Assembly (NCBI RefSeq): GCF_004010195.1
Contig: NC_057726.1
Span: 57,500,327-57,564,326 of the forward strand
Reading direction: 5' to 3'
Source of the DNA: Chiloscyllium plagiosum
Taxonomy: Eukaryota
DNA: 64,000 nt
The notes beneath the pieces were generated by a model, which searched no databases, was not told the origin of the DNA, and saw nothing but the letters and a program-made list of their open reading frames with translations. The position numbers and the translations under genes are program-made. Below are positions 3,742 through 47,632 of this stretch, piece after piece (position 1 is the stretch's first letter; every line of letters begins with the position of its first letter).

Positions 3742-4241
3742 NNNNNNNNNNNNNNNNNNNNNNNNNNNNNNNNNNNNNNNNNNNNNNNNNNNNNNNNNNN
3801 NNNNNNNNNNNNNNNNNNNNNNNNNNNNNNNNNNNNNNNNNNNNNNNNNNNNNNNNNNNNNNNNNNNNNNNNNNNNNNNNNNNNNNNNNNNNNNNNNNNN
3901 NNNNNNNNNNNNNNNNNNNNNNNNNNNNNNNNNNNNNNNNNNNNNNNNNNNNNNNNNNNNNNNNNNNNNNNNNNNNNNNNNNNNNNNNNNNNNNNNNNNN
4001 NNNNNNNNNNNNNNNNNNNNNNNNNNNNNNNNNNNNNNNNNNNNNNNNNNNNNNNNNNNNNNNNNNNNNNNNNNNNNNNNNNNNNNNNNNNNNNNNNNNN
4101 NNNNNNNNNNNNNNNNNNNNNNNNNNNNNNNNNNNNNNNNNNNNNNNNNNNNNNNNNNNNNNNNNNNNNNNNNNNNNNNNNNNNNNNNNNNNNNNNNNNN
4201 NNNNNNNNNNNNNNNNNNNNNNNNNNNNNNNNNNNNNNNNN
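3742..4241. other. Assembly gap (N run)
   Basis: Run of N. Confidence 1.
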
Positions 4242-17982: not shown

Positions 17983-18566
17983 NNNNNNNNNNNNNNNNNN
18001 NNNNNNNNNNNNNNNNNNNNNNNNNNNNNNNNNNNNNNNNNNNNNNNNNNNNNNNNNNNNNNNNNNNNNNNNNNNNNNNNNNNNNNNNNNNNNNNNNNNN
18101 NNNNNNNNNNNNNNNNNNNNNNNNNNNNNNNNNNNNNNNNNNNNNNNNNNNNNNNNNNNNNNNNNNNNNNNNNNNNNNNNNNNNNNNNNNNNNNNNNNNN
18201 NNNNNNNNNNNNNNNNNNNNNNNNNNNNNNNNNNNNNNNNNNNNNNNNNNNNNNNNNNNNNNNNNNNNNNNNNNNNNNNNNNNNNNNNNNNNNNNNNNNN
18301 NNNNNNNNNNNNNNNNNNNNNNNNNNNNNNNNNNNNNNNNNNNNNNNNNNNNNNNNNNNNNNNNNNNNNNNNNNNNNNNNNNNNNNNNNNNNNNNNNNNN
18401 NNNNNNNNNNNNNNNNNNNNNNNNNNNNNNNNNNNNNNNNNNNNNNNNNNNNNNNNNNNNNNNNNNNNNNNNNNNNNNNNNNNNNNNNNNNNNNNNNNNN
18501 NNNNNNNNNNNNNNNNNNNNNNNNNNNNNNNNNNNNNNNNNNNNNNNNNNNNNNNNNNNNNNNNNN
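17983..18566. other. Assembly gap
   Basis: Run of N. Confidence 1.
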
Positions 18567-18910
18567 GCCAGTCAATTCCTAATCCAAACCTCCAACTCAC
18601 TCTCAATGCCATACCTCCGTATTTTTTGCAGTAGTCTACCATGGGGAACCTTATCAAACGTCTTACTAAAATCCATATACACCACATCTACTGCTTTCGC
18701 CTCGTCCACCTCCTTAGTCACCTTCTCGAAGAATTCAATAAGGTTTGTGAGGCCCGACCTGCCCTTCACAAAACCATGCTGACTATCCTTGATCACATTA
18801 TTCCTATCCAGATGTTCATAAATCCTATCCCTTACAATTCTCTCTAAGACTTTGCCCACAACAGAAGTGAGACTCACCGGCCTATAGTTACTAGGCTTAT
18901 CCCTACTCCC
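18567..18910 (-). mobile_element. CR1 RT fragment
   Basis: SQHGFVKGRSGLTNLIEFFE..YMDFSKTFDKVPH. Confidence 0.9.
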
Positions 18911-23889: not shown

Positions 23890-24669
23890 NNNNNNNNNNN
23901 NNNNNNNNNNNNNNNNNNNNNNNNNNNNNNNNNNNNNNNNNNNNNNNNNNNNNNNNNNNNNNNNNNNNNNNNNNNNNNNNNNNNNNNNNNNNNNNNNNNN
24001 NNNNNNNNNNNNNNNNNNNNNNNNNNNNNNNNNNNNNNNNNNNNNNNNNNNNNNNNNNNNNNNNNNNNNNNNNNNNNNNNNNNNNNNNNNNNNNNNNNNN
24101 NNNNNNNNNNNNNNNNNNNNNNNNNNNNNNNNNNNNNNNNNNNNNNNNNNNNNNNNNNNNNNNNNNNNNNNNNNNNNNNNNNNNNNNNNNNNNNNNNNNN
24201 NNNNNNNNNNNNNNNNNNNNNNNNNNNNNNNNNNNNNNNNNNNNNNNNNNNNNNNNNNNNNNNNNNNNNNNNNNNNNNNNNNNNNNNNNNNNNNNNNNNN
24301 NNNNNNNNNNNNNNNNNNNNNNNNNNNNNNNNNNNNNNNNNNNNNNNNNNNNNNNNNNNNNNNNNNNNNNNNNNNNNNNNNNNNNNNNNNNNNNNNNNNN
24401 NNNNNNNNNNNNNNNNNNNNNNNNNNNNNNNNNNNNNNNNNNNNNNNNNNNNNNNNNNNNNNNNNNNNNNNNNNNNNNNNNNNNNNNNNNNNNNNNNNNN
24501 NNNNNNNNNNNNNNNNNNNNNNNNNNNNNNNNNNNNNNNNNNNNNNNNNNNNNNNNNNNNNNNNNNNNNNNNNNNNNNNNNNNNNNNNNNNNNNNNNNNN
24601 NNNNNNNNNNNNNNNNNNNNNNNNNNNNNNNNNNNNNNNNNNNNNNNNNNNNNNNNNNNNNNNNNNNNN
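23890..24669. other. Assembly gap preceded by (ca)n microsatellite (23821-23889)
   Basis: Run of N. Confidence 1.
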
Positions 24670-30414: not shown

Positions 30415-30725
30415 TTAGATTAGATTTTTTTAGATTAGATTAGATTACAGTGTGGAAACAGGCCCTTCAGCCCAACAAGTCCACACCGACCCGCCGAAGC
30501 GCAACCCACCCATACCCCTACATTTACCCCTTACCTAACACTACGGGCAATTTAGTATGGCCAATTCACCTGACCTGCACATCTTTGGACTGTGGGAGGA
30601 AACCGGAGCACCCAGAGCACAGGGAGAATGTGCAAACTCCACACAGTCAGTCGCCTGAGGCAGGAATTGAACCCGGGTCTCTGGCGCTGTGAGGCAGCAG
30701 TGCTAACCACTGTGCCACCGTGCCA
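30415..30725 (-). mobile_element. HE1/V-SINE
   Basis: Near-identical reverse complement of 3473-3741; (ttaga)n tail. Confidence 0.85.
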
Positions 30726-31225: not shown

Positions 31226-31417
31226 TCATTTTCGGCCCTGTTGCTTTCTGAGTTGTGGTGAGGCATAAATAAGTTTGTTGTTTTTCTGTGGGTTTCTTAG
31301 TGGGACGGGGGGACAAGCTGTTTTCTTTTCCACATACTGGTGCTTTGTATCTGTTGAAGGGCCACTGGAATCCATAGCTGTATATGCCATCTTGAAATTA
31401 GTTGGTTTCTGCATATG
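31226..31417 (-). CDS. VJ-C1 receptor gene, exon 6 (cytoplasmic tail and stop)
   Basis: ggcttccag|HMQKPTNFKMAYTAMDSSGPSTDTKHQYVEKKTACPPVPLRNPQKNNKLIYASPQLRKQQGRK*; phase 0 matches exon 5. Confidence 0.7.
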   Translation of the reverse strand, partial: HMQKPTNFKMAYTAMDSSGPSTDTKHQYVEKKTACPPVPLRNPQKNNKLIYASPQLRKQQGRK

Positions 31418-31789
31418 CTGGAAGCCAAGAGTACAAAGGATATCAGCAAGACATTGAACTTGACAGTACCAAAACCTTCTGTGCCCCATAAAGAAATAGA
31501 CTGTACTTGTCCCCAGGCTTTCACTCCCCTCACTATTTACCTGACTGCAAGTTAACTTTCCTGTTAATATTTGTTTGCATGTCCCAAGCACACTGAATTG
31601 CATCTTCCATCAACAAGCCAGGGACTGGATTTGGTGAGCTTAACTAGGTGAGCTGAATAACTTCATTGTTCCCAAACATGCTGCTTGTTTTGGTGTTGGT
31701 GGACATCAGTTCCACCATCCCCTCATTAAATTTGGGGCCATGCCGTGGAGGTACACTCTTGCAGTGTCACTTCAACAAGATACCGGCAA

Positions 31790-32045
31790 GAGAAAGGAGA
31801 AAGATTCAAAAGGACATTAGGGTCAACTTCTTTACACAGAGAGTGGTTCGTGAGGGGAATGAGCTGCTAGAGAAAGTGATGGATGTGAACACAGTTACAA
31901 AAGATATTTGGTTAAGTTCATGAACAGGAAGGATTTGGAGGAACATGGGCCAAATGTAGGCAGGTAGGACTCGTTTAGTTTGGGAACATGGTTGGTCTGG
32001 ACTAGTTGTACTGAAGGGTCTGTTTCCATGCTGGATAAGTCTATA
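31790..32045 (+). mobile_element. CR1 3' end
   Basis: NFFTQRVVREGNELLEKV and CR1 3' UTR. Confidence 0.7.
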
Positions 32046-32480
32046 GAATCATCACAGAATCCCTACAGTGTGAAAGCAAACAATTCAGCCCATTGAGACC
32101 ACATCACCACAAAGGCACCCTATCACTGGATGTAAGTTTGCTCGCTGAGCTGAAAGGTTAGCTTCCAGGTCACTCAGCAAACTTACATCCAGAACCTCAA
32201 CCTGACCTACAAATCTTCTCAAAACTCACTAACCTTATCCCTGAAACCTTGCATTTCCCCTGGATTATCCACCTAAGCTACACTTCCTTGGATAATATGG
32301 GGTAATTTCAGCATGGCCAATCCACCTCACCGACACATCTTTGGATTGTGGGAGGAAACTGGAAAGAAACCCATGCAGACACGGGGATAATATACAAACT
32401 CCACACAGACAGTCTCCCAAGCAGGAAACAAACCCAGATCCCTGACGCTGTGAGGCAACAGCGCTAACTATTGTGCTACC
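32046..32480 (-). mobile_element. HE1/V-SINE with a nested Penelope-like hairpin fragment (~32125-32230)
   Basis: SINE V-domain reverse complement; ctggatgtaagtttgct..agcaaacttacatccag inverted pair. Confidence 0.65.
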
Positions 32481-32658
32481 CTATAACCGAATAGTCGAAT
32501 AATTAAATGTGCATACATATATGTATAATCTCTCAATAAGTGTGAATTATAAAGAATCAATAAAGACAACATCCAAGATGGAATGTCCAAGGAAAAATGC
32601 AGTGAGAACCCTCTCCCGCATTTTTAAAGTATTACAGAGAAGCTAATAGAAAAATTAC

Positions 32659-32696
32659 CTGAACACATCTGTGTTCTCCTCTTTTTCGTCTTCTGC
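32659..32696 (-). CDS. VJ-C1 receptor gene, exon 5 (basic juxtamembrane segment)
   Basis: ctctggtag|(G)RRRKRGEHRCVQ|gtaatt; 38 nt, phase 1 to 0. Confidence 0.7.
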
Positions 32697-33049
32697 CTAC
32701 CAGAGAATAAACAGATTTTAAAAACATGATTTTTAAATAAATTCTCTACCAGATTAGTATCAGACAGATCACAAATTGTCCTTCAATGTATAACTGCCTT
32801 TGACACAATGATTCATAGCAACAATCCACTTTTATAATCCAATCCAGGAACCATTCAATGAATGTGTATGACATCACTCTGTTTCATTTAATTTAACAGA
32901 TCCCAGTGCTGGAGCAATCAAAATATTTTAGTTTTTAACCAGATCACTACTGATTGCTGCCACAATTTTCTTTTTGCTGCCAATTATTTCTCATCATTAT
33001 GAATACAGTCAGAGTAATGTGAGTCTTATTATAATTACTGTAATGATAA

Positions 33050-34690
33050 GAGTATGAAAAAAAGGAGTAGGAATAGGCCATTCTGCCCCTTAAGCCTGGT
33101 TTACTATTCATCGGGTTCATTGGATGATTTACCCATGGTTCAACCCTTTTTCAAGCTAGTTCAGCATACCGTCAACACTGATATTTCAAAAACCTGCCTA
33201 CCTCCTCTTTAAATGCTTGCAATGATCTAATCTCTACAATTCCCTGAGGCTGGGAATGCAAGCACGTCCTGTCCTCTGAGAGAGGAAATTCTGTTGTATC
33301 TGAGTGTTTCCTTATTCTGCAATGATGTCCCCTAGTTTAAGACTCCCCCATTAATGGAAACATCGTTTCGACATTTACCCTGTTGAGACCCTCAGAATCT
33401 TGTACGTTTCATTAAAATCACCATCATTTATCGAAACTCTAATAAACAAAGCCCTACGTGCTGAGCTGTTCTTGATAAATCAATCTCTTTATCCGAGGAA
33501 TCAGCCTGCTAATTCACTTTTGAACAGCCTCCAATGGCTTTATACCTTTTTTTATAAAAATACAATGGCCAAAACTGCATACAGTACTCCAGATGTGGCC
33601 TCACAGACATACTGTACAGTTGTAAGAAACATTTCCTGTTTTTAAACTTCAACCATTTAACAATAAAGGCCAAAATTCTCTGATTTAATTACTTTCTGCA
33701 GCTGTATGCTAAATTTTTCAGATTCAAGCACAAGGACATCCAAATCCTTTTGTGCTGCACTTTTATGGAGTCTCTCTCCTTTTGATTCTTCTCACCAAAA
33801 TTTTATTTCCCTATATTAAACACCATCAGCTATATTTTTCCCCATTCTCTCAACCTCTCTGTATCATTTTGCTATTCCTTATGTCCTCATCATAACAAGC
33901 TCTCCCATCTATTTTTGTAACATGCACAAATATCAATATGTTACATTCTGCCCCCTTCCCAACTCACCAATATAGACAGTAAATAATTGAGGCACTACGA
34001 CTGAATGTTGTGACAATCCAAGAGCTTTGTTTTTCCAACCTGAAAAAGAACTATTAATCCTGACTGACTTCAGTATGTTAACCAATCCTAACCAATGTTA
34101 TATATTATTCCCAATACCACAAGCTCCCATTTAGTGCAATAACCTTTTATGTGGTACCTAATTTAATGTCATTTGAAAATTTAAATACATCTTAACAGTT
34201 CCCCTTTATCAACTCTGCTTATTGTATTCTCAAAGAACACCAGCAAATTTGTCAAACCTGATTTTCCTTTCACATAACCATGTTGATTCTATTTGATTGT
34301 GTTAAGCTGTTCTAAATGCCCTGCCATTTCTTCTTTAAGAATGGACTCTGGATCTTTCCAATGACAGACATTAGAAAAACTGACTATAGTTTCTTGCTTT
34401 CTGGCTCTTTCCCTTCTTGAATAGGAGCAACTAATTTGCTGGAACTTGCTTGGAATCCAGTAATCTCTGGAATATTTTGATGAATATCTCTGCAGCCACT
34501 TTCTTTAAAGGCCTCTGATGCAGGCCATCAGATCCTGGTGCTTCTAGTCCCATTCATTTGTCCCTTGCATTAGAAACTGTTACAAAATCTTTCCACCCAT
34601 ATCTTGCTTATCTGTTATTTCCGGGATTTTTATAATGCCGTCCACTGTGAAGACCAATACAAAATATTGGTTTGAATGGTTGGCAGAATA
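33050..34690 (-). mobile_element. Old decayed CR1
   Basis: Reverse-complement CR1 3' and RT motifs (caaaactgcatacagtactccagatgtggcctcac etc.). Confidence 0.6.
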
Positions 34691-35424
34691 CCTGATTCTT
34701 GCTCTGCAAAAGCTTGCCACAATCAAACAGAGTCAACATGGTTTTGTGAAATGGATCTCATTTGATAAATTTGCTAAAGTTCTTTGAGGGGCTGATAAAG
34801 GGAGTCTGGTAGATGTACTGTGTTTAAATCTTCTTATGGCATTAGTTTGATCTGTGATTTCCCACTTTGCCATTATCAATTCCTCAATCTTTGCATTTGT
34901 TAAGTGTAGAATTTACTGATTTTTGAAGGCCTAACACTTTGAAAAGGTGAGTAAGCATAGATTTATCTGAAGACTTACAAAAAAACTGCAGGATTCCAAG
35001 GTGGCAAACCTGGGTATATTACATACCACTTTTTTTCTATCATACCCACCAGTAACAGGACAGAATTAGACTACAGTACTGCAATGTGCTAGCTGTAATG
35101 TCAGGATACTTAATGCACCACAAGTAACTATCTATGGCATTGAATCATTCATTCACCCTTGCATTAATTGAAATGCCAAACCAATTATTCCATTTATATG
35201 TCAAACTGACAATTGACTAATGGCGTAAAATAATTGTTGTTTATCTATAGAGGAGAATATTAACTTCCTCAGTGTTGTATTGATTGTTCTATTCATAGTA
35301 CTGGTGTTTCAGCCAAACATAATTCATTTGCACTATCGCTTCAATTCACTGTAATTTGTATTTTAAAAAATTGTGCATTGAAAATTCTACATTTAAACCG
35401 ATTAGCAAAGTACAATATGCTCAC

Positions 35425-35532
35425 CTCTGCAGAATTTACAAAGTATTATTGTAATAATCAGAAGCAGCAGGAGGAAAACCCCACTCCCGACAGCGATATA
35501 GATCCACCAAGGCAGAACACCTGAGTCTGGCT
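35425..35532 (-). CDS. VJ-C1 receptor gene, exon 4 (transmembrane)
   Basis: ttttgcag|(E)PDSGVLPWWIYIAVGSGVFLLLLLIITIILCKFCR|gtgagc; 108 nt, phase 1-1, no charged residue in the helix. Confidence 0.85.
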
Positions 35533-37584
35533 CTGCAAAAGCTCAAAGTGCAAATACAGAATTCAATGTGATAGCAAAATCGCACCACAGGAAATGTGTG
35601 AACAATACAACATTTTGCATACTTCAAACTCATACACTCCAACACTGATACATTGAACAAGAAGGTGATTTAATCTGACAATACCACATCCTGATAAGTA
35701 AACATAGTGGTTGTAAATAATACTTACTGGTTAGAAATATATATGTATCATAAAATTGTCAGGATGACAATGGAACAATGGGTAGAGGAGAAATACTTTA
35801 ATTGACCTTTTCTGTCCCCTACTATTCTAACTGTGTCCTTATTCACTGCAAAAGTCTTCTCTGTGACAAACTTGCATTTCCCCATTTATGGACTGAATAA
35901 GCTCATCATTGATGTTGGTCCTTGTCTAGACCTGAACAAGAGGAGCTTCTTTTTGACCTGTCTGCACTCTCTGTCCCTTCAAAGGACTGAAGGCATTGGG
36001 GTTAATGTCAACATTTCTCTCACAGAGCTGCACTCAATCTCAGCTTTCACAGCTACTGTAACTGATCAACACCATTTAAATTTGATCAATTTCTACTTTA
36101 ATTTCTGAATTGTGGTGGCAGGAGTTATCCCAAATGCAGAAATATTGTGACCTTTAAGAGCCATCAAGTTTGTGAGCAGGCATTTAGCAAGCTATTTCTC
36201 TGCTAAACAAATATCTCATGCCAAGGCACAGATGTAATAATGCACATTACGTTGCAATCCTGTTGAAGCTGCCTTTTTTTTATGACTGGAACTTACAAGT
36301 TTGCTTCAATTGCCTTTTTTTGAGAGATACGAAAATAGCTGGACTTTAAAAAATCTTGCTTCAGCATAAGTGAAAAAAAGGGCCTTTGAGAAGGGAATTT
36401 TCCAAGGCAAAATAAAGCATTATCTGAATAGCAAAATTCTAAAGAATACAAACACAGCAATAAAGACGGTTTTTAAAAAACATTTAGATTTGTAACAAAA
36501 TGAAATTGCAACTCAAAAACTTCAAAACTCATCACAAATGTAATTATTTCTAGTCTCATTAACAATATGCTCAGCCATAAAAACAGCAGCTAAAGTTATC
36601 TTGCAAAAATTAGCTGTCTCTTTGAAACTATTTACAATATTAATAGATTACAATTAAAGATTCTTTAAATAATCACAGATTTCAACATAATTATGAACAT
36701 TGAAGAGATGCCTGGCATATGTTGTCTGATTAGCTAAAAAAATTAGAAAACTTGTAATATTAATAATAATTATAACAGAATCAGCTTTTTTACGAGGTAA
36801 TGGAATTTGCTAACAGATAGCCAGTACAATAGAGAATAGAATTCAAGCAGTCCTTAGAGATAAACAATGTGGGTATGATCAAAAAGTGGACAGCCAGCAA
36901 CTTTGGAATGCAGCATAGAAAGATCCTAAGGCCAAGCGATTACAATAATTGTTAAACATCATTAAAAAATTAAGAACTTAAGACTGTCCATTGATCAGGT
37001 GTTCAGTAACCACATTGATTATTGTAACACAATATATAAAAATATTGCTTTTTACTGTAAAATCAGAGTGCGTCATTGATCTCTTTTCCAATCGGAGCTG
37101 AAGATTAAGAAAATGATTATGTTCTCACGCCAAAGCCAGATTCAGGGAAGATGTTTTGGCCATTCCCCTGTACTAGCAAGTTTTTGCTTGAATAAAAGTC
37201 CACTATGTGCCTGTATCCTGTCTGCCTCCCAGTTTTTCTCTCTGGTTGGGGGAATCTCTCTCCTACAAATCCCAAAATAGAATGCTGCAGCAAAAATTGG
37301 GGTTCGTGATGGTCTTCATTTGCTGAAGGAAATGAATTAGTTTGAAAATGAAGATCATCCAAGTGACTTTGAATGAAGTAGCTGGTGGGGAACGTAAGCC
37401 CGTGTTAAGATACAAAATATGGGTTCAATTTCACTGGGTCCTTTCCATTGGCTGGAGGAATTTGGTCAAAATGATATTTTTTTTTGGGCAATGCACCTCA
37501 TTTCTATGCCTTACACGGACTATTCCTCAGAGATGGCAGAATGGGAAATTGGTATTGCTGCAGGTCATAAACCCCTCAAGACAT

Positions 37585-39660
37585 AGAGTCTTAGAGTCGT
37601 ACAGTATGGAAGAAGAGTCTTTTGTCCAACTTGTCTATACCGACCAGATATCTGAAATTAATCTAGTCCCATTTGCCATTATTTGGCCCATATCCCTCTA
37701 AACCCTTCCTATTTATATACCAATCCAGATGCCTTTTAGATGTTGTAATTGTACCAGCCTCCACCACTTCCTCTGGCAGCTCATTCCATACACACAGCAC
37801 TCTCTGTGTGAAATAGTTGCCCCTTAGGTCTCTTTTATATCTTTCCCGTCTCACCCTAAATCTATGCCCTCTCGTTCTGGATTCTCTCACTCCAGGGCAA
37901 AGACCTTGTCTATTTACCCTATCCATGCCCCTCATGATTTTATAAACCTCTATATGGTCACCCCTCAGCCTCTGACGCTCCAGGGAAAACAGCCCCAGTC
38001 TATTCAGCCTCTTCCTATAACTCTAACTCTCCAACCCTGGCAACATCCTTGTAAATCATTTCTGCATCCTTTCAAATTTCACAACATCCTTCCTATACCA
38101 GGGAGACCAGAATTGCATGCAGTTTTCCAAAAGTGGCCTATGAACCTGCATTCCAAGGTCTCTTTGATTAGCAACACTCCCCAGGACCTTATCTGGGTAA
38201 GGTATGCAGCACTTGACATTTAGCTAAATTAAGCTCCATCTGCCACTCCTCAGCCCATTGGCCCATCTGATCAAGATCCTGTTGTACTCTGAGGTGGCCT
38301 TCTTTGCTGTCTACTACACCTCCAATTTTGGTGTCATCTGCAAACCTATTAACCATACCTCCTATGTCATATCAAAATTATTTGTATAATTGACAAAAAG
38401 AAGTGGATACTTATGGCATATTATTAGTCACAGGCCTCCAGTTTGAAAAGCAGCCCTCCACCACCACCCTCTGTCTTCAACTTTCGAGCCACTTCTCTAG
38501 CCAAACTTCTCTTCTTGTATTCCATGTGATCTAACCTTGCTAACCAGTCTTCCGTGGGGAACCTTGTTGAATGCCTTACTGAAGTCCATATAGATCACAT
38601 CCACCACTCTGCCCTCATCAATCCTCTTTGTTACTTCTTCAAAAAACTCAGTCACATTCATAAGACATGATTTCCCATGCACAAGGGCATGCTGACTTAC
38701 CCTAATCAGTCCTTGCCTTTCCAAAAACATGGAAATCCTGTCTCTCAGGTTTCCCTCCAACAAATTGCCCACCATTGATGTCAGGCTCACCGGTCTATAG
38801 TTCCCTGGCTTTTCCTTACCACCTTTTTAAAATAGTGGCACCAAATTACCCAATCTCCAGTCTTCTGGTACCTCACCTGTGGCTACCAATGAAACAAATA
38901 TCTTAGCAAGGGGCTCAGCAATCACTTCTCTAGCTTCCCACAGAGTCCGAGGGTACACTTGATCGGGTTTTGGGGATTTATCCACTTTTATGCTTTTTAA
39001 AATGTCCAGCACCACCTTCTTTGTAATATGGACATTTTTCAAGATGTCGCAATTTGTTTCCCATGTTCTCTCTCTTCCATACCCTTCTCCACAGCAAATA
39101 CTGGTGCAAAATACTCATTTAGTGTCTCCCTTATCTCTTGTGGTCCCACACCCAGGTGGTCTTGCTGATCTTTAAGAGGGCCTATTCTCTCCCAAGTTAC
39201 TTTTTTTTCCTTAATGTATTTGTAGAATCCCTTTGGATTCTCCTTAATCCTATTTGCCGAAGCTCTCTCATGTGCCCTTTTTGCCCTCCTAATGTCCCTC
39301 TTAAATATACTCCTGCTGTCTTTCTATTCTTCTCAGGATTCACTTGATCTCTGCTATCTATACCTGACACATGCTTCCTTCTTATTCTTGAGCAAAACCT
39401 CAATTTCCCTCCTCATCCACGTTCCCTACACCTAACAGCCTTGCCTTCCATGCCAACAGAAATATACTGTCTCTGCACTCTCACTCTCTCATTTTTGATG
39501 GCTTCCTATTTTCCAGCCATCCCTTTACCTGCGAATGTCTATCCTTAATCAACTTCTGAAAGTTCTCACCTAAAACAGTCAAAATTAGCCCTCCTCCAAT
39601 TTAGAAGGTTATCATTTAGATCTGGTTGATCCTTTTCCATCACTATTTTAAAACTAATAG
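37585..39660 (-). mobile_element. CR1 LINE (RT and 3' end)
   Basis: YMDFSKAFNKVPHG, GEVPEDWR, WNELPEEVV. Confidence 0.9.
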
Positions 39661-39664
39661 AATT

Positions 39665-41150
39665 ATAAGACCATAGAAACATAAATTAGGCCATTTGGCC
39701 CATTGTACCTGTTCCACCATCCAATCATGGCTGACAGGTTTTCAACCCCATTTTCCCCCTTTGAATCAAGAACCTATCTATCTCTGTTTTAAATATACTC
39801 AATGACCTGGCCCCAAAAACCTTCTGTGGCAATGAATTCCATAGATTCACCACTCTGGTTAATGAAGTTTCTCCCTATCTCCGTTCTAAATGATATTCCC
39901 TTTTCTCTCAGGCTGTGTTCTCGGGTCCTGGTCTCTCCTGCCAATAGATACATCTTCCCAACATCCATTATGTCCAGTCTATTTAGTATTCTTTAAGTCT
40001 CGATCAGGTCCCTCTCTCAATCTTCTAAACTGCATCAAGTATAGTCCCAGAGTCCTCAAATGTTCCTCATATTCCTCAGCCTTTCATTGCTGAGATCACT
40101 CTCGTGAACCTCCTCGGGTCCTGCTCCAGGGCCAATGCATCTTTCCTGAGATGTGCGCCCAAAATTCCTCACAGTATTCTAAATGTGTTCTGACCAGAGC
40201 CTTGTAGAGCCGAAGAAATACATCCCTGTTTTTATATTCCAGTCCTCTCAAGGTAAAATGACAACATTGTATTTACCTTTCTAATTACTGATTCAACCTA
40301 TACATTTACCTTAAGAGAATCCTGGACTGGGACTTCCAAATCCCTTTGTGCTCCAGAATTTTTGAATTTTTTCCCCACATAGAAAATATTCCATGCCTCT
40401 ATTCTTCCTCACAAAGTGCATGACCTCACACTTTCCCACACTGTACTCCATCTGCCATTTCTTAGCTCACTCTCCTTACTTGTCCAAATCCGTCTGCGGC
40501 CTTCCCCTCTCCTCAATACTACCTGCCCCTCCTTGTATCATTGGCAAACTTACCCAGAATGTTCTCAGTCCCTTCATCTAGATGTTAATGTATAAAGTGA
40601 AAGATTGTGCTCCCAACGCTGACCCTTGCAGGACATCACTAGTCATTGGCTTCTATCCTGAGAAGGACCCTTTTATCCCCGATTTCTGCCTTCTGCCACA
40701 CAGCCAATCTTCTATCCAAGCCTTTAACACCATGGGCCCTTATCTTGCTCAGCAGCCTCTGTGCAGCACTTTATCAAAGGCCTCCCTGAAGTCCAAATAG
40801 AAAACATCCATTTGGCCCCCATTGACACCTCAGTCACCTGCCCTGCCCTATTTCCCAAGAGTAGGTCAAGTTTTGCACCTTCTCCAGTAGGTACATCCAC
40901 ATATTAAATCAGAAAATGTTCTTGTACATATGTAACAAATTCCTCTCCATCTAATCCCTTAACACAATGGCAGTCCCAGTCTATGTTTGGAAAGTTAAAT
41001 CCCCTACCATAACCAACCCATTATTCTTACAGATAACTGAGATCTCCTTACAAATTTGTTTCTCAACTTCCAACTGACTATTGGGGAGGGGACGGATGCG
41101 TTTATAGTACAATTCCAATAATCATCCTTTTCTTATTTCTCAAGTTCCAT
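39665..41150 (-). mobile_element. Additional CR1 fragments (3' end/RT, then endonuclease)
   Basis: ataagaccatag tail; reverse-complement RT and endonuclease motifs. Confidence 0.7.
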
Positions 41151-41534
41151 TAACTGCTCCTACTCAAACATGGAAAGGCCACTGATAGGGGGAATGAAGA
41201 AATTAGATAGCACTGGAGGAGGCTTTCCCTTTGAGGGGGTAATTAGTCTGGTTGTGTCTTTGTAAGCCGTGTATATCATTTCTCAATCTTCAATGGCATT
41301 CCCTTTAGAAAGCTGTTAGCAGGCAGTGCCTTTCTGACTGAGGTGTGTCCGTGTGCAGTACGGTCAGTTTATAAAGACCCACATTCGGGTCCCACTAGTT
41401 TCAGAAAGCACATTGACCAAAGCACCTGAGACACGAGGACATACAAGGGTAAGGGGCCAAGTGCTGGGCACATGGGATGAGAGTAGTCAGACTGGCACCA
41501 AAGCCCACGAACAATGTGTAGGACAGCGCCGTAC

Positions 41535-41840
41535 CTTCAGCACCGGAGATGTAGGTGTACCGGACTTCCACTTGCTTCCCACTGAACGACAGCCGGCAGC
41601 TGTAAAGCGTCCCATTGCGAACCGGCCGCGTCTCCTCCAGGTAACTGGAAGCCTCGAACCCTTGGCCCGGCCTCGGCTCGACCTGGCTGCGGATCCCGCT
41701 CAGCACCTCGCTGCCGTTCACAAACCAACGGACACTCAGCTGGTCCGAGTGAAAGGCCCCAGAGAGACAGGCGAGCCTGAGGAAGATCCCGGACCCTCTC
41801 CCGAACAGGGTGGCGTCAATCTGCGGAGAATTCGGGGAAG
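41535..41840 (-). CDS. VJ-C1 receptor gene, exon 3 (C1-like Ig constant domain)
   Basis: ctctccccaag|(A)SPNSPQIDATLFGRGSGIFLRLACLSGAFHSDQLSVRWFVNGSEVLSGIRSQVEPRPGQGFEASSYLEETRPVRNGTLYSCRLSFSGKQVEVRYTYISGAE|gtacgg; 56 aa between the Cys residues, L-x-C, F, V-x-W-x-x-NG, F-x3-S/Y-L and Y-S-C motifs; phase 1-1. Confidence 0.85.
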
Positions 41841-42309
41841 CTTGGGGAGAGACGGCACCAAGTCAATACCATTGGGGGGAGCGGGTTCAATTCCAACCTC
41901 CCCTCTTTTATTATTGCTACGTTCACTTGAACCCTCCCCTTTGGGATTCAGTTGAAGCCACATTCTCTCAACACGAGTTTAAACCTGACCTTTCGTTTTT
42001 CCTTTCTGTGCAATCGGAGCAATACTTTGGCACGTTTGCAGATCGGGGAAAGGTTAGCAATGTGAGTGGATGGTTTTACCAAGAGATATCGATACGCCAA
42101 GGATGTGGGTCAAACTGGGGAGCACTTTTCAGTCGAGGCTAATGTGAGACTTTGGAATTGGGAGGGACAGAGGGAAAGGGGAGGGGGTGAACATCAATCA
42201 TTAAAATGCCATAAAACGGATACAGACTCGTGCAATTCTGGCTACAGTGTGTGGAGTGTGAGAACACAATTTGATCCAAGCCACGTGTCCGCTTTAAGAA
42301 GCCTTGGTG

Positions 42310-42582
42310 TCGTCTCTGGAAGCGGTGCTGGGCCAGGGAGGGATTGCTCTGGGAACGGATGCAACTTGCATTTGCTCCGGGTCTCCTCCCACAGCCTAAA
42401 GATGTGCAGGTTAAATGGATTGGCCAGGCTACATTGCCCCAGGGATGTGCAGGCTGTGGGCAATGCCGAGGAGATAGGGTGGGGTGGGTTCAGTGTGGGA
42501 TGCTCTTCGGAGGGTCGGGGTGGGCTCGAAGGGCCGAATGGTCTGTTTCCATACTGTAGGAAATCTATTTTATTCTATTCTA
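42310..42582 (+). mobile_element. HE1/V-SINE-like, 5' decayed
   Basis: ctcccacagcctaaagatgtgcaggtt..gggccgaatggtctgtttccatactgtagg..(tattc)n. Confidence 0.6.
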
Positions 42583-42954
42583 AAGTCTACCCCCAAGGGC
42601 AAAGTCAGAAAAAGTGGTGACAGAAAATGCAGCTGTATTCGCTACAGCTCAGGAGGCGGCGTGACTGAGTTTAGGAGATTATAGACCGAATATAGGGAGA
42701 CTATTTCTGCTCCTGGAGAGTGTAGGGCGGGTTAACGGTGCAATAACTAAAACCAGACCTTGCAGGAATGAAGCGAACAAATGTTTCTACATAGGAACTT
42801 TGGAATCTTTTTCCATAAATAACCGATATTAAAACGATTGTAACTGTTGAGAGTTCAGTTCATAAATAATAATTGGCATTAAATCAACAATAACCAAATT
42901 TGCTAAAAGAGATATGAGGGACAGGTCAGGTTATTTAGTTCGGTCCCGCCCGAC

Positions 42955-43090
42955 TTTTTATTCCTGATGAAGGGCTTTTGCCCGAAACGTCGATTTTACT
43001 GCCCCTCGGATGCTGCCTGAACTGCTGTGCTCTTCCAGCACCACGAATCCAGAACCTGGTTTCCAGCATCTGCAGTCATTGTTTTTTACC
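42955..43090 (+). mobile_element. Penelope-like end with hammerhead core (42964-42991)
   Basis: CTGATGA-A-GGGC-tttt-GCCC-GAAACGTC. Confidence 0.65.
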
Positions 43091-43377
43091 CTGATGAGCA
43101 GAACAGGCTCCTTGAGGTGATATTGCTGCCTTTGTGAAGGGAAGAGAGAGTGATATTGAATTCGGAATGTCTCTGAGGAGACATGGGGTCATACAGACGG
43201 ACGCCCTGCTGAAGTACCCAGCTGTTGCAGCCAGCGGGGTTCACTGTATATGGGGCTTGCTGTGTTCACTTGCCCTGTTCTTTCAGCCTGGCTGCGGAGG
43301 GAACCGGCCTGCCTGTCTCTGAGCCTGAACAAGGGTCACTGAACTCGAGACCTGACACTGTTTTCCCACCCTCCACA

Positions 43378-43697
43378 GAGTTAAAAATCACACAACACCC
43401 GGTTACTTAAATTATCTCGAGAATGTAACTTGAGAGCACTTTTACATATTACTGAACCGAAATCTACAACCCATTCTAAAAGATGGAAGAATTAACAGCA
43501 ATCTAGGTTTGCTCAGTAGATTTCAGTAGCATGACACTGTAATCTTTTGCTATAAATTCCGTGTCTTATTCTCCATAACCTGATGAAGGAGCAGCGCTAT
43601 GAAAGCTAGTGCTTCCAAATAAACCCGTTGGACTAATACCTGGTGTTGTGTGATTTTTAACTTTATCCACCCCAGTCCCACAGTGGCGCCTCCACAT
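43378..43697 (+). mobile_element. Penelope-like family B fragment
   Basis: cctgatgaaggagcagcgctatgaaagctagtgc (stem II mutated). Confidence 0.6.
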
Positions 43698-44654
43698 TAC
43701 CTCTCCCCACACACACACACTCTCTGCCGAGTGTCTGCAGCACTTTCTGATTCGGGTTGGGTTCGGATCTCCACAAGCCTTGCTTCTGTCTGACACTGCT
43801 GCTGAGTTATTCCCGTTTGTCCAATTTGATTTTTATGCAAACGAGCGACTCTCGAATGAACGATTTCATCACTGCCTGACAGCCCCGGGATCCCCCGGTT
43901 CAGGGCAGTCGAGAGGGCGATGGCACGGGAAGATCCCAGCGGAAGAATTCCCCGCACAGTTTCATGGTGGGCCCCAGTTCCCATTCCGGTCGCTCAATGA
44001 CACACGCTGAGTGAAAGTGGTTTGGGACTGCTGTCAGGCTGGTGCTCCTGTAGCCCCAACCTCCTCCCTAAGCCTCCCCACTGCTCCAGGCCTGGCCTGT
44101 GCCTCTCTGGGTCTGCGCCTTATCACTGCATCACCCCTCAGTAAGTCCCTCGCCGGCCCCCTACAAGACCCTGTGGCCAGCTCATTCACACACCGCATCT
44201 CTCCTTGTCTCCATCTCTCTCTCTCCTGCTCACTCCCCACTCCTGGGGAAGAGCCCTCAGCCACCTCTCAGTATGTGCTAGGGGTAGGCGCCACACAAAC
44301 GCCTTTGGTACAGAAGAAATTCCGAAGACACTGATCTCTCCCAATGATGTCGCAGCCGGGAATGTTCTGTTTTGTGGGAGCGCCTCATTTCATAAAGAAA
44401 GTCGGGGTCGGTCAATCACCAACCTCGCCCCCCACCCCCTTCCCCACTTTAACAATAAATAGCCCCGCTGCCTGGTCAAAGTTCCGCGCTTGGTGGTTGT
44501 CCGGAGTCCCGAAGTGTAGAGGTCTCTGAGCTCAGAGCAACAGGCGGCTGCTGACCAGAGAAAGTGAGGACTGCAGATGTTGGAGATCAGAGTCGAGAGT
44601 GTGGTGCTGGAAAAGCACAGCAGGTCAGGCAGCATCTGAGGAGCAGGATTGCGG

Positions 44655-44795
44655 AGGAGATATAGGCATAAGTGAATGGAATATCGGGATAAAAGGAAGG
44701 CAATATAGGAATACTGTACAGGGACGGAATATAGGGTAAGGGAACGGAATATAGGGATAATGGGATGGAATGTAGGGATAAAGAGAGGGAATAAA
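44655..44795 (+). repeat. Degenerate ~20-bp minisatellite
   Basis: Repeated ggaatatagggataa-like units. Confidence 0.6.
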
Positions 44796-46718
44796 TCTCC
44801 AGCGTTACATGCAAGTGACACAAAAGAGATAATGTTATAAAGTCGCCAAGCGTTTGTGGGATTATTGAAATGGGTTCACTTATTACAGCCTTCAATTATT
44901 GTTCACTCCTAGATAGATAAAAGCGACTAAATTAAGCCGTTAATTAACGGAGTTTGATTTTATATTCATGTTAACATATATTAATTTTAATACTGACGCC
45001 CCACTGTGTAAATTTCAGTCTGAAGTTTATTTTTAATGTTTAATCGTTCGCGGGTCTATTCCTCTCTGTCCTGACTACACCCAGTGTAATACTGCAGCAA
45101 AGCCAAGGCACCCGCTACAGCTCAGGGGGAATCCACTCATGTTCCACAGGATTTCAATCCCGGCTTCATCCGCCTTTCAGTGAAAGCTGGGAGGGATTAT
45201 AGGGAAAGTCTGGAGCTGACTGGGATATTCCGCCGGGTACAGGAACACACAGTGAGATCCCATTTACTGCAGGGCCCACCCCGGGGTTAATCTGCGGCGG
45301 AGAAAGGGATGAGGATTGAATGGGCGCCGAGCCGCCATCAGACGGTTATCCAAAACGACTCTCCAGCCCCGGGATGTTTAATCCCTGCTCAAATATTCCC
45401 ATAAAATCCAGGTTTACTGCAAAAGACACGGCTCATTTAAAAAATAGCCTGTGAGAAGGAGAAAAAAATCCACACCAACATTCAATATCATCAGCGCTGA
45501 TCTCACCCCAGCCTCGACCCCACTCACCTCCCTCTAACACGTTATTCGTTTAAAAATCTGTCTCCTCATTACATTTAAGTTAAAAATCACACAACACCAG
45601 GTTATAGTCCAACGGGTTTATTTGGAAGCGCTAGCTTTCAAACCTGTTGGACTGTAACCTGGTGTAGTGTGATTTTTAACTTTGTCCACCCCAGTCCAAC
45701 ACCAGCTCCTCCACATCAGGAAGGAGAGGGTTAAAATCACAGGTTTATTTGGATTATAACTTGGTGTGGTGTATTTTTTAACTCTCTCCTTCTCGATTAC
45801 CTACGAGGGGAAACATTCTCTCGACATCGACATTGTCATTCGCCTTGAGCATCTTAGAGACCTGAATTAGATCTCCTCTCATTCTCCTAAACTCCAGACA
45901 GTATCATCTCAAACTGCTCAATCTCTCCCCATAAGACAAACCCCATATCTCTGGGACCAATTCAGGGAACTACCTCGGAACTGCCTTAAATCTACACCCC
46001 TCTTTAAGGAGACCAAAACTGTACGCAGTAGTCCGGGTGTGGTCTCACTAAAGGAGAAAGTGAGGTCTGCAGATGCTGGAGATCAGAGATGGAAATGTGT
46101 TGCTGGAAAAGCGCAGCAGGTCTGACCTGGTGGTCTCACTAAAGCCTTGTACAGAATCAGCAAACTTTATGCCGTATTGCTTGGTCATTAAATGTCCACA
46201 ATTTCAATTGCTCATTTATATTCTGTTTTTTTATTGTAAAGAGTTTCCCAGTTTGACGCTGCCATGGAGTGTGGAAAAACTCATTAATTAAAGATCTCAT
46301 AACACCAGGTTATAATCCTACAGGTTTGTTTGGGAACACTAGCGTTCAGAGCAGCGCTCCGAAAGCTAGTGCTTTCAAATAAACCTGTTGGACTATACCC
46401 AAGTGCTGTGTGATTTTTTTAACTTTGCCTACCCCAGTCCAACACCGGCTCATCATTACTTAAACACCTTGTAATCACACAGCCCCTACCCCACCCCATC
46501 CTCCGGCCAATAGCCCGGGTGTGAAATGATGGCAGAGTTGAGTGGGTCCCAGTTCCCTGGAGCTGGAGGTCAGGAAGGTGATTAGCAATGTTTTAGGACT
46601 ATTGTCCTGATTGAGACCCTCTCTGGAACCTCCCTAAGATTTGAACGTTTCCCTGGGCGGAATGGCCCCCACTGTGTTGAGTTGGGGGGGGTGAGGGTGT
46701 AGAATGTGACTCACTTAC

Positions 46719-47036
46719 CGGTGACCAGGAGCCGTGAGCCGCTGCCTTGCCCCGCTTTGCCCTGGTTGCTAACGCGGCAGTAATAGAGCCCGGAATCAGA
46801 CACATCCACATGCAGAATGTGAAAGGCGGCGCTGGCTTTATTCCGGATTTCGAAGTGATACCTGAAATCGCTGCTTCTCTGGAGAAAGCCCCGCTCCCCG
46901 TCCCTCCACCAGTTCACCTGGACCTTGGAAACATCCCGAGCGAACGGGAAACTGCAGTAGAAAGTTGCGTTGGAACCGACTGTCTCGTTCAGGATTTCCG
47001 GATACTGACCCACGCTGAACTTGGAATTCCCAGAGA
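46719..47036 (-). CDS. VJ-C1 receptor gene, exon 2 (V-set domain with germline J-like G strand; NKp30/NCR3-like)
   Basis: ctccacag|(V)SGNSKFSVGQYPEILNETVGSNATFYCSF..VNWWR..DSGLYYCRVSNQGKAGQGSGSRLLVT|gtaagt; canonical C, W, DxxxYYC and GxGSxLxV; 318 nt, phase 1-1. Confidence 0.92.
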
Positions 47037-47278
47037 CTGTGGAGAGAGAGAGAGAGAGAGGGGAAAAAAAAATCTTTCAGACAGAAACACTCAATATAGC
47101 CGGCCCGGGCCAGACAGAGGAGGAACAGTTACTCAAGAGCTGGCAAAATATTTATAAGGCGCCTTTTACTCTCCCCCCCCCCCCCCCATAGCCGCGGGAT
47201 GTCCTGAAAATCTTGGAGAGAGTTTGGAAGAACAGGAGGAATTCTCTCAAGCGAGGAGCAGGGAAGAGGCTTCCTCAC

Positions 47279-47339
47279 CTGCACAGAGAGCGGTCAGGAT
47301 GACAGCGAGCCCACAGGAAACGGGCAGTCGGCTGCCCAT
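47279..47339 (-). CDS. VJ-C1 receptor gene, exon 1 (signal peptide)
   Basis: aacATGG Kozak context; MGSRLPVSCGLAVILTALCA G|gtgagg; phase 1 joins the V exon across a 242-nt intron. Confidence 0.85.
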
Positions 47340-47572
47340 GTTCCAAACCGGGGCCAGGCTGTTTCCCAAAAGGGATCTTACCGCCCCCCTCCCCGACCCC
47401 CTTCCCCGGCTTCTAACTGAGGTTTCCAGGTCCTCTTCCCAGGATCACCTTCCCACCCTCCACATAACGCACACAGCTGAGAAACTGTCAGATCTCCCGG
47501 AAAGATAGGCGCAGAAATGTTACCAGAGGATCAGTCACCCCGCCCCCAGTACTCAGAGACCTCCCCCCCCCC

Positions 47573-47632
47573 NNNNNNNNNNNNNNNNNNNNNNNNNNNN
47601 NNNNNNNNNNNNNNNNNNNNNNNNNNNNNNNN
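47573..47632. other. Assembly gap in the putative promoter
   Basis: Run of N after a poly-C tract. Confidence 1.

What the first reader, a model, noticed from the sequence alone, without database searches (positions are those of the whole stretch)
31226..47339. Intact non-rearranging VJ-C1 antigen-receptor-like gene
Seen: six exons (47279-47339, 46719-47036, 41535-41840, 35425-35532, 32659-32696, 31226-31417) splice GT-AG with phases 1,1,1,1,0 into an uninterrupted 340-aa type I membrane protein. The V exon already contains the J-like G strand (QGSGSRLLVT) and I found no heptamer-spacer-nonamer RSS near it. It is followed by one C1-like domain. Established: C1 domains are largely confined to Ig, TCR, MHC, B2M, tapasin and SIRP-type proteins. 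Germline VJ-C1 genes are discussed as relatives of the pre-RAG antigen-receptor ancestor (PRARP/VJC1-type genes, shark UrIg). The V resembles NKp30 (VSQPPEI..CSF and CRV..GxGTRLVV pattern), but NKp30 has no C domain and has a charged TM. Inference: a possibly uncharacterised shark receptor with a TCR/IgL-like ectodomain and its own signalling tail.
Basis: partly seen in the sequence, partly recalled or inferred. Interest (0 to 1): 0.88.

Follow-up and report, generated by a model that had tools for sequence, protein, structure and literature searches.

The report
Conserved shark germline VJ-C1 receptor gene
This is a real, expressed bamboo-shark gene for a membrane receptor whose outer part looks like one chain of a T-cell receptor or antibody light chain but needs no gene rearrangement; it is conserved across sharks and rays yet has never been studied.

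Summary
Six minus-strand exons translate as described, all with GT-AG borders. Each exon translation is an exact substring of RefSeq XP_043563134.1, "uncharacterized protein LOC122558520" of Chiloscyllium plagiosum, 343 aa.

Spliced contigs in three public runs from two studies join V exon end 46719 directly to C exon start 41840. One of them also joins the leader exon.

The second domain is C1-set (Pfam E 4.6e-7, no C2 or I-set match). Its model matches C1 domains best, at Z 12.5. No RSS is present.

The gene is the single-copy member, in 13 elasmobranch species, of a large cartilaginous-fish family of VJ-C1-TM receptors. NCBI names these inconsistently: SIRP-like, NCR3-like, Ig lambda-like, tapasin-related-like. 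This orthologue group has no ITIM, ITSM or ITAM. Instead it keeps a PxxPxR motif and a YA(T/S)P motif.

It is not UrIg, UrIg2, SIRP or NKp30 by architecture. The scan noted sister clusters on the same chromosome piece. I found no paper on the family. One relevant paper (Kinlein 2021) was not held.

The parts
47279..47339 (-). Exon 1: start codon and split leader (MGSRLPVSCGLAVILTALCA + 1 base), phase-1 donor. The 5'UTR reaches at least 47400.
   Evidence: Translation and sequence. Contig X7 record 22 covers 47279-47400 and continues into exon 2. Exact substring of P0182 at residue 1.
46719..47036 (-). Exon 2: the whole VJ domain in one exon. It holds two Cys, WW after strand C, DSGLYYC and a J-like G strand GQGSGSRLLVT.
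   Evidence: Pfam V-set E 9.5e-8 over profile positions 3-109, with Ig_3, ig and I-set scoring about the same. Contigs of X1, X2, X7 and X13 end at 46719. Substring of P0182.
46670..46676 (-). Lone CACAGTG heptamer in intron 2, 43 nt after the donor. It is not an RSS.
   Evidence: No nonamer-like run at 12 or 23 nt. 16 heptamers in the window against 9.7 expected by shuffling.
41535..41840 (-). Exon 3: one C1-set Ig domain.
   Evidence: Translation. Pfam C1-set E 4.6e-7, 30.5 bits against a cutoff of 21, with no C2 or I-set hit. AlphaFold model pLDDT 90.3. Foldseek top 50 are all MHC class II membrane-proximal domains. VIA Z 12.5-11 to MHC II beta2, Ig CL, IgM C2, IgNAR C3, TCR C-beta and UrIg2 C3. 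Contigs join 41840 to 46719.
35425..35541 (-). Exon 4: stalk and transmembrane helix (…PDSGVLPWWIYIAVGSGVFLLLLLIITIILCKFCR). There is no charged residue in the membrane span.
   Evidence: Sequence. Both versions occur as substrings of database proteins: P0182 and P0156 with AFA, P0187 without. The orthologue model has a helix at 240-264. This junction was not tested with reads.
32659..32696 (-). Exon 5: polybasic juxtamembrane stretch (RRRKRGEHRCVQ), phase-0 donor.
   Evidence: Substring of P0182.
31226..31417 (-). Exon 6, coding part: tail with MAYTAM, PPVPLR (PxxPxR) and LIYASP (YxxP), then stop TGA. The 3'UTR continues downstream towards a SINE at about 30725.
   Evidence: Contig X1 record 1 has 872 nt beyond exon 3, enough for exons 4-6 plus about 0.5 kb of UTR. 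This is arithmetic; the contig sequence was not seen.

Best explanation
The locus is LOC122558520 of the whitespotted bamboo shark. It is an intact, transcribed, germline-joined VJ-C1 type I membrane receptor gene.

It belongs to a multigene family of non-rearranging VJ-C1-TM receptors found only in cartilaginous fish. Within that family it is the slowly evolving single-copy member, kept one-to-one in sharks, skates and rays.

Shown: the gene structure; splicing of leader, V and C1; the C1-set nature of the second domain; absence of an RSS; orthology across elasmobranchs; an uncharged TM; and a tail without ITIM, ITSM or ITAM.

Inferred mechanism: the V domain, through its CDR-like loops, binds a conserved partner that is probably host-encoded. 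The reasoning is the 1:1 conservation, in contrast to the expanding paralogues. The Cys-rich, polybasic juxtamembrane segment (CKFC..RRRK) would anchor the tail at the inner leaflet. Signalling would run through the conserved class-II SH3 ligand (CPxVPxR) and the conserved tyrosine in YA(T/S)P. In sharks a second tyrosine in N-x-x-MAYT would contribute. This amounts to recruiting SH3/SH2 adaptors of the Grb2/Crk/Nck type rather than SHP phosphatases or ITAM kinases.

Whether the signal activates or inhibits cannot be told from sequence.
For: - Exon anatomy and phases.
- Exact identity of all six exon translations to XP_043563134.1.
- Spliced contigs in 3 of 4 runs laid, from 2 studies, join 46719 to 41840, and one also joins 47279.
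- Pfam C1-set on the window exon and on 20 of 20 family members.
- C-exon model (pLDDT 90) matches C1 domains.
- By sequence, the C exon is closest to Ig lambda CL and TCR C-beta among solved chains.
- The family profile hits lambda chain (1e-36), UrIg2 (5e-34) and SIRP-alpha (7e-28).
- Orthologues: the full proteins are 49-66% identical to the Heptranchias orthologue P0004 used as query. Against the window species' P0182, by region, V is 45-94%, C1 43-93% and the tail 31-93% identical. Species are Hemiscyllium, C. punctatum, Rhincodon, Stegostoma, Cetorhinus, Carcharodon, two Scyliorhinus, Heterodontus, Heptranchias, Leucoraja and Mobula.
- Tree: an orthologue clade of 13 rows has SH-aLRT 100 and short branches, and its order largely follows the species tree. 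Paralogues sit on long branches.
- Region conservation across the 13 species: V 63%, C1 60%, stalk+TM 71%, tail 56% mean pairwise identity.
- Tail census: 0 of 13 have ITIM, ITSM or ITAM; 12 of 13 have YA[ST]P; 12 of 13 have PxxPx[RK]. By contrast 13 of 18 paralogues examined carry ITIMs.
Against: - No ligand, cell type or tissue is known. The runs are coded and their libraries are 'not on record', so 'RNA' is the tool's guess. I infer RNA from the spliced contigs and empty introns.
- Junctions 3-4, 4-5 and 5-6 were not checked with reads.
- The motif reading of the tail is pattern matching. YxxP and PxxPxR are short and common, and the first tyrosine is missing in both batoids.
- The conserved partner is an inference from conservation only.
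- V-set versus I-set is not resolved. Pfam Ig_3, V-set, ig and I-set all score 31-34 bits, and the structural neighbours are tied at Z 13-14.
- The tree used full-length proteins and a single distant outgroup on a very long branch.
Confidence: 0.8

Rival explanations
1. It is a member of the shark NCR3 (NKp30) family that has kept or gained a C1 domain, and so belongs to an already published family.
For: NKp30 is among the best single-domain V matches: E 1e-3, and Z 13.6 with the highest identity in that list, 28%. NCBI names a V-only isoform of a paralogue 'NCR3-like'. A frog protein named NCR3 is among the V hits. Kinlein et al. 2021 described eight divergent nurse-shark NCR3-family subtypes; I recall this and saw the paper only in reference lists. 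The text was not held.
Against: NKp30 has no C domain and has a charged TM; this gene has a C1 domain and an uncharged TM. PMC12227049 calls NCR3 a 'VJ domain gene' and does not mention VJ-C1-TM relatives (sections 7, 13 and 16 read). Shark NCR3 is described as MHC-linked (recalled). Here the MHC-type notes shown and the UrIg-like note of this genome lie on other pieces (unchecked notes).
Confidence: 0.15
2. It is the elasmobranch counterpart of SIRP (signal-regulatory proteins), as NCBI's names suggest.
For: NCBI names orthologues 'tyrosine-protein phosphatase non-receptor type substrate 1-like' and 'SIRP gamma-like'. SIRP-alpha and SIRP-gamma are hit by the family profile at 7e-28 and 2e-24. 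SIRP-gamma d3 aligns at Z 11.4. Paralogues carry ITIM plus TxYxxI/V tails that resemble SIRP-alpha; that resemblance is recalled, the motifs themselves are counted.
Against: There is one C1 domain, not two. No ITIM occurs in any of 13 orthologues. SIRP does not stand out: Ig lambda and UrIg2 score higher. SIRP is absent from the top 60 for either exon alone. NCBI's names for the same family also include TCR-beta-like, Ig-lambda-like, tapasin-related-like and B7H6-like, so the names are best-hit labels.
Confidence: 0.08
3. It is a B7/butyrophilin-type ligand (V plus membrane-proximal C domain) rather than a receptor.
For: PD-L1 V is among the V-exon hits at E 6e-4. The two-domain orthologue model has its best TM-score with bovine butyrophilin: TMt 0.55, rmsd 6.2. 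PD-L1, BTN, ICOS-L, B7-H6 and B7-1 C domains tie at Z 11-12. Two paralogues are named 'NCR3 ligand 1-like'.
Against: The G strand carries the J-type GxGxxLxV motif; that B7 V domains lack it is recalled, not tested. Pfam calls C1-set for 20 of 20 members and CD80-like C2-set_2 for only 6 of 20, more weakly. No B7 member is in the top 60 of the profile search. The interdomain geometry comes from an AlphaFold model with pTM 0.44.
Confidence: 0.07

Closest known systems
UrIg and UrIg2 (elasmobranch non-rearranging VJ-C1 'antibody-like' genes; PMC12227049, sections 4, 7, 13 and 16 read)
   Same: A single-exon VJ domain with split leader, followed by C1-type domain(s). No RSS. Retained in elasmobranchs. 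UrIg2 (PDB 9dmx) is the second-best hit of the family profile at E 5e-34, and its C3 domain aligns at Z 12.3.
   Different: UrIg has three C1 domains and is secreted. UrIg2 has nine or more C1 domains. This gene has one C1 domain, a TM and a signalling tail. Only the F-G strands of the V domain aligned to UrIg2, and UrIg2 is not in the top 60 for the V exon alone. The family is also present in Callorhinchus. By an unchecked scan note, the UrIg-like gene of this genome lies on another piece.
SIRP family (V-C1-C1, ITIM or DAP12-coupled)
   Same: A non-rearranging J-bearing V followed by C1-set domains, in a type I membrane receptor. The wider shark family contains ITIM-tailed members and, by unchecked scan notes, activating-type members like the SIRP alpha/beta pairs.
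   Different: One C1 domain only. This orthologue group has no ITIM in 0 of 13. There is no preferential sequence similarity.
NKp30 / NCR3
   Same: A short VJ-type V domain. NKp30 has the highest identity (28%) among the structural neighbours of the V domain, at E 1e-3 by sequence.
   Different: NKp30 lacks a C domain and has a charged TM (recalled). This gene has a C1 domain and an uncharged TM.
TCR and Ig light chains
   Same: The ectodomain layout of one chain (leader, V with J strand, one C1, stalk, TM) and phase-1 introns. The C exon's best sequence matches are lambda CL and TCR C-beta. The two-domain model's top Foldseek hits are lambda chains and a TCR beta chain at E about 3e-15.
   Different: The V and J are germline-joined with no RSS. 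There is no stalk cysteine for an interchain disulfide and no charged TM residues for CD3-type partners. It has its own 76-residue tail.

Membership tests
Ig C1-set domain (Pfam PF07654) | Sequence match above Pfam's gathering score, with no better C2 or I-set match | tested here: met
   Window exon 3: C1-set E 4.6e-7, 30.5 bits against a cutoff of 21. The only other hit is generic 'ig', below its cutoff. 20 of 20 family members match C1-set, best E 5.3e-18. C2-set_2 matches 6 of 20, best 1.3e-5.
Ig C1-set domain (Pfam PF07654) | C-type fold with a D strand, close to solved C1 domains | tested here: inconclusive
   The model (pLDDT 90.3) has 8 strands, including a short one after C and a D strand. 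The top matches are C1 domains at Z 12.5-12.0. B7-type and some C2-type second domains (Rst, Neph1) follow within about 1 Z unit, so the fold alone does not separate the sets.
VJ-type (germline-joined) V domain | V and G strand in one exon, with a J-like GxGxxLxV motif and no RSS | tested here: met
   Exon 2 reads through …YYCRVSNQGKAGQGSGSRLLVT to the donor. Orthologues have GNGTGTRLLVT. There is no heptamer-spacer-nonamer. The aromatic residue before GxG is absent, and Thr is Ser in the window species.
Rearranging antigen receptors (TCR, IgL) | Separate V and J segments flanked by RSS | tested here: not met
   A single VJ exon, with a lone intronic heptamer and no nonamer.
UrIg / UrIg2 | VJ followed by three or more C1 domains (UrIg secreted; UrIg2 with 9-11 C domains plus TM) | tested here: not met
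   Only one C1 exon lies between V and TM. No other Ig-like exon was found by tblastn or ORF scan. RefSeq models of 13 species all have one C1. The definition comes from PMC12227049.
SIRP | V-C1-C1 ectodomain | tested here: not met
   One C1 domain only.
SIRP | Tail with ITIM-type tyrosines (alpha) or a short tail with a basic TM residue (beta) | tested here: not met
   0 of 13 orthologues have [SIVL]xYxx[ILV] or TxYxx[VI]. The TM is uncharged.
SIRP | Binds CD47 | not testable with these tools
   Needs a binding assay.
NKp30 / NCR3 | Single VJ domain, no C domain, charged TM residue (definition recalled) | tested here: not met
   A C1 exon is present and spliced to V. The TM has no charged residue.
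NKp30 / NCR3 | Linkage to the MHC (recalled from Kinlein 2021 and PMC12227049) | tested here: inconclusive
Of 43 MHC-word notes of this genome, the 8 shown are on other pieces, and so is the UrIg-like note. These are unchecked AI notes.
B7 / butyrophilin | V without a J motif plus a B7-type C domain; ligand for a CD28-family receptor | tested here: inconclusive
   A J-like motif is present. Pfam prefers C1-set. Structural scores tie. No reference phylogeny was possible.
PRARP (Fu et al. 2019) | Family definition not available to me; the paper is not held | not tested
   I saw only the citation and one sentence in PMC10751288. Reptile multi-VJ receptors are the nearest V relatives outside cartilaginous fish. 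Whether they are PRARPs was not established.

The most novel reading that the evidence does not exclude
This orthologue group, together with its sister subfamily and the Callorhinchus co-orthologue, is a surviving single-chain form of the pre-RAG antigen-receptor ancestor. It has the minimal layout: leader, VJ, one C1, TM and its own tail. That is closer to one TCR or IgL chain than the multi-C UrIg and UrIg2 are.

On this reading the large family on this chromosome marks a third non-rearranging antigen-receptor-like locus, besides the MHC (UrIg) and the antigen-receptor complex (UrIg2).

The evidence does not exclude it. The C1 and the J-C junction are most like Ig lambda and TCR beta by sequence. 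The family predates the split of holocephalans and elasmobranchs. PMC12227049 does not discuss it.
Probability: 0.12. Interest if true: 0.85.

Novelty: new variant of a known kind. Interest (0 to 1): 0.55.

Why it matters
Non-rearranging genes that combine a J-bearing V domain with C1 domains are the material used to reconstruct how antibodies and T-cell receptors arose before the RAG transposon split a V exon. The current candidates, UrIg and UrIg2, have three or more C domains and are made mainly in liver and gill (PMC12227049).

Here a VJ plus single C1 plus TM gene, laid out like one TCR or light chain, is shown to be transcribed and kept one-to-one across sharks, skates and rays. It sits inside a much larger family that public annotation labels with five unrelated names.

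If reference phylogenies and chromosome maps place this family near the antigen receptors, it adds a third locus to the origin story. If not, it still defines a conserved, unstudied immune-type receptor with an unusual non-ITIM tail, and its ligand and cell type can be sought directly.

Tried and rejected
- Hidden extra C exons. tblastn of each exon against the window and a stop-to-stop ORF scan with an Ig pattern found none. Intron 3 holds LINE reverse-transcriptase fragments instead.
- RSS. Only a lone intronic heptamer was found.
- C exon alone against the 5.8-billion-protein set. Nothing was found, as expected from the length window of that tool. This says nothing about longer relatives.
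- Synteny. Only unchecked scan notes were available.
- White-shark chromosome inference. The Carcharodon orthologue lies on a 193.5-Mb record, while the MHC is on chromosome 19 (PMC10751288, Fig. 2 legend). I could not turn record length into a chromosome number, so I draw no conclusion.
- Tail in the ESM Atlas. No usable hit.
- Bacterial promoter/terminator scan of the 3' region. It is irrelevant to a shark gene and I ignore it.
- Literature. Seven full-text searches found no description of a cartilaginous-fish VJ-C1-TM family or of this locus. Three papers that could bear on novelty were not held: Flajnik 2023 on UrIg, Flajnik 2012 on B7/NKp30 and Kinlein 2021 on shark NCR3. Fu 2019 on PRARP was seen only as a citation. 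Supplements were closed and not requested. The supplementary gene tables of PMC12227049 and PMC10751288 might list this locus or its chromosome.
- No reference sequences of TCR, IgL, SIRP, B7, NCR3 or UrIg could be brought into a tree, so 'closest family' rests on E-values and Z-scores against solved structures.

Full report
**What is there.** On the minus strand, six exons lie at 47339-47279, 47036-46719, 41840-41535, 35532 (or 35541)-35425, 32696-32659 and 31417-31226. All have AG/GT borders and phases 1,1,1,1,0. They translate into a 20-residue split leader, a 105-residue V-type domain, a 101-residue C domain, a stalk with an uncharged TM helix, a polybasic segment and a 63-residue tail.

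Each was handled alone. Each exon translation is an exact substring, in the right order, of RefSeq XP_043563134.1, 'uncharacterized protein LOC122558520 [Chiloscyllium plagiosum]', 343 aa (P0182). So the window comes from the whitespotted bamboo shark, and the gene is already predicted there but unnamed.

The sister species C. punctatum has predicted isoforms of both kinds. This looks like a tandem acceptor.

**Is it transcribed and spliced as claimed?** I searched public runs with the V exon and laid four of them on 41500-47400. In X1 (a 1530-nt contig), X2 and X7, single contigs pass from 46719 directly to 41840. In X7 the contig goes on to 47279-47400.

The unique parts of the 4.9-kb intron have depth 0 in these three runs. 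The large depths elsewhere in the intron are repeats. That makes 3 of 4 runs, from 2 studies. The fourth run, X13, has exon contigs ending at the same borders and also intron contigs.

The libraries are 'not on record' and the tool only guesses RNA. The spliced contigs are what make me read them as RNA. They rest on RefSeq models in 13 species.

**No rearrangement signals.** The G strand (GQGSGSRLLVT) is inside the V exon. The nearest CACAGTG is intronic, 43 nt past the donor, with no nonamer at either spacing. The window has 16 such heptamers against 9.7 expected.

**Domain types.**
- The C exon scores Pfam C1-set at E 4.6e-7, above the curated cutoff, with no C2-set or I-set hit.
- All 20 family members tested match C1-set, best E 5e-18. 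Only 6 of 20 also touch CD80-like C2-set_2, more weakly.
- By sequence, the C exon's best solved relatives are Ig lambda CL and TCR C-beta.
- Its AlphaFold model (pLDDT 90.3, built on a 40-row alignment) matches MHC class II membrane-proximal domains first in Foldseek.
- In VIA-align it matches MHC II beta2, Ig CL, IgM C2, IgNAR C3, TCR C-beta and UrIg2 C3 at Z 12.5-12.2. B7-family C domains and SIRP-gamma d3 follow at Z 12.0-11.3. Those values are tied, so the C1 call rests on sequence.
- The V exon is a short V/I-type domain. Pfam Ig_3, V-set, ig and I-set all score 31-34 bits.
- The V exon's best single-domain sequence hits are amphioxus VJ-C2 (7e-6), PD-L1 V (6e-4), NKp30 (1e-3), TCR V-alpha and PD-1.
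- In the orthologue model its structural neighbours (IgNAR V, CD79b, VL, PD-1, NKp30, CD8) are tied at Z 14.4-12.8. NKp30 has the highest identity, 28%.

**Relatives.** An exhaustive HMMER search with the V exon found 469 proteins at E up to 1e-3. Many of the top rows are giant multi-Ig proteins that score by summed repeats. The best single-stretch hit was a 347-aa protein, 66% identical. Further searches and cluster look-ups showed two things.

First, there are one-to-one orthologues in Hemiscyllium, C. punctatum, Rhincodon, Stegostoma, Cetorhinus, Carcharodon, Scyliorhinus torazame and canicula, Heterodontus, Heptranchias, Leucoraja and Mobula.

Second, there is a much larger family of VJ-C1-TM proteins in sharks, rays, sawfish and the chimaera Callorhinchus. 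NCBI names them 'SIRP-alpha-like', 'SIRP beta/gamma-like', 'NCR3-like', 'NCR3 ligand 1-like', 'Ig lambda-1 light chain-like', 'tapasin-related-like', 'M1-specific TCR beta chain-like' or 'uncharacterized'. Such scatter marks best-hit labels, not a characterised family.

Outside cartilaginous fish, the nearest V relatives among the ten hits I looked up are reptile receptors with several VJ domains and a frog protein named NCR3. The only outside hit of the family profile is a lizard 'SIRP-like' protein at E 7e-16.

In a quick IQ-TREE of 55 family proteins, the orthologue group, including the Mobula protein, forms a 13-row clade with SH-aLRT 100. Its branches are short and its order largely follows the species tree. 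Its sister is a second conserved subfamily that shares the PWWIY start of the TM helix, plus one Callorhinchus protein (support 99). The ITIM-bearing paralogues sit on long branches. The outgroup branch is very long, so the root is weak.

**The tail.** Across the 13 orthologues, mean pairwise identity is 63% (V), 60% (C1), 71% (stalk+TM) and 56% (tail).
- None of the 13 has an ITIM, ITSM or ITAM.
- 12 of 13 keep YA[ST]P near the C terminus. Stegostoma has YATA.
- 12 of 13 keep a PxxPx[RK] motif (CPHVPPR; PPVPLR in the window species). Heterodontus has SHMPPR.
- The membrane-proximal tyrosine (N-x-x-MAYT) is present in the 11 sharks and lost in both batoids.
- A Cys cluster and an RRK run follow the membrane.
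- By contrast, 13 of 18 paralogues examined carry canonical ITIMs, often with a TxYxx[IV] motif.

My count agrees that it is not a canonical inhibitory tail.

**How it most likely works.** Shown: a cell-surface type I protein with a VJ-C1 ectodomain, no stalk cysteine, an uncharged TM and a conserved tail.

Inferred: it binds a conserved partner through the V domain. It then recruits SH3/SH2 adaptors through PxxPxR and the phosphorylated YA(T/S)P, helped in sharks by the MAYT tyrosine. The naming of adaptor classes (Grb2, Crk, Nck) rests on general knowledge of these motif classes, not on a test.

**Comparison with known systems.** UrIg (VJ plus three C1, secreted) and UrIg2 (VJ plus nine or more C1, TM) are the published elasmobranch non-rearranging VJ-C1 genes (PMC12227049; abstract and sections 4, 7, 13 and 16 read). 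This gene differs in architecture, and its V is not specifically UrIg2-like.

SIRP, NKp30, rearranging receptors and UrIg each fail at least one defining feature that I could test. B7 was inconclusive and PRARP could not be tested (see Membership tests).

PMC10751288 (passages found by term search) mentions VJ-C1-type genes in tetrapods and UrIg, but not this family.

**Context in the genome.** The window holds no other gene. Every family member I looked up lies on the same large record as the orthologue in its species.

Unchecked first-reader notes of this scan report clusters of VJ-C1 paired receptors on the same piece, at 3.9, 4.4, 4.5, 11.4, 12.4 and 12.7 Mb beyond this window. They place a UrIg-like gene and the MHC-type notes shown on other pieces. 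So the scan has seen this family before, on other DNA of this genome. Linkage to the MHC remains untested.

It is a new variant of a known kind, the non-rearranging VJ-C1 receptors. Interest is moderate to high for comparative immunology. It depends on a reference phylogeny, a chromosome map and the one unread paper on shark NCR3 genes.

Noticed in passing
window 41585 (exon 3): The window has A on the + strand. Contigs of X1, X7 and X13 all read T (table 3). On the coding strand this turns codon 85 of the C exon from Phe to Tyr, the residue found in the Hemiscyllium and C. punctatum orthologues. It is a polymorphism or a reference-assembly variant.
   Followed up: partly
window 35532-35541 (exon 4 acceptor): Two in-frame AG acceptors lie 9 nt apart. 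RefSeq of this species uses the upstream one (adding AFA). C. punctatum has predicted isoforms with and without AFA. This was not tested with reads.
   Followed up: partly
Hemiscyllium ocellatum proteins P0184/P0185 (not in the window): These are products of a second, almost identical locus ('SIRP beta-1-like', 278 and 265 aa). They have Tyr changed to Asp inside the TM helix (WWIDIAVG), and the tail ends after exon 5. This may be a young duplicate becoming an adaptor-coupled partner, or decaying.
   Followed up: no
window 37666-39412, minus strand (intron 3): A run of LINE-type reverse-transcriptase ORF fragments. Similar fragments lie at 2580-3378, 18572-18877, 55025-56201 and 58308-58628.
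   Followed up: no
window about 30560-30725, minus strand: A tRNA-derived SINE-like element sits in or just after the 3'UTR. Related copies give the huge repeat depths in intron 2 (for example 44455-44651 and 46031-46227).
   Followed up: no
window 47573-47632: A 60-base N run lies 234 nt upstream of the start codon, so the promoter region is incomplete in this assembly. Three larger N runs lie at 3742-4241, 17983-18566 and 23890-24669. None was filled or searched.
   Followed up: no
X7 contig on window 41535-47400: The X7 contig differs from the window at 14-15 positions per exon, about 5% (table 8). X1, which carries the same organism code, differs at 0-1. X7 may be a different species or population than its label suggests.
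   Followed up: no
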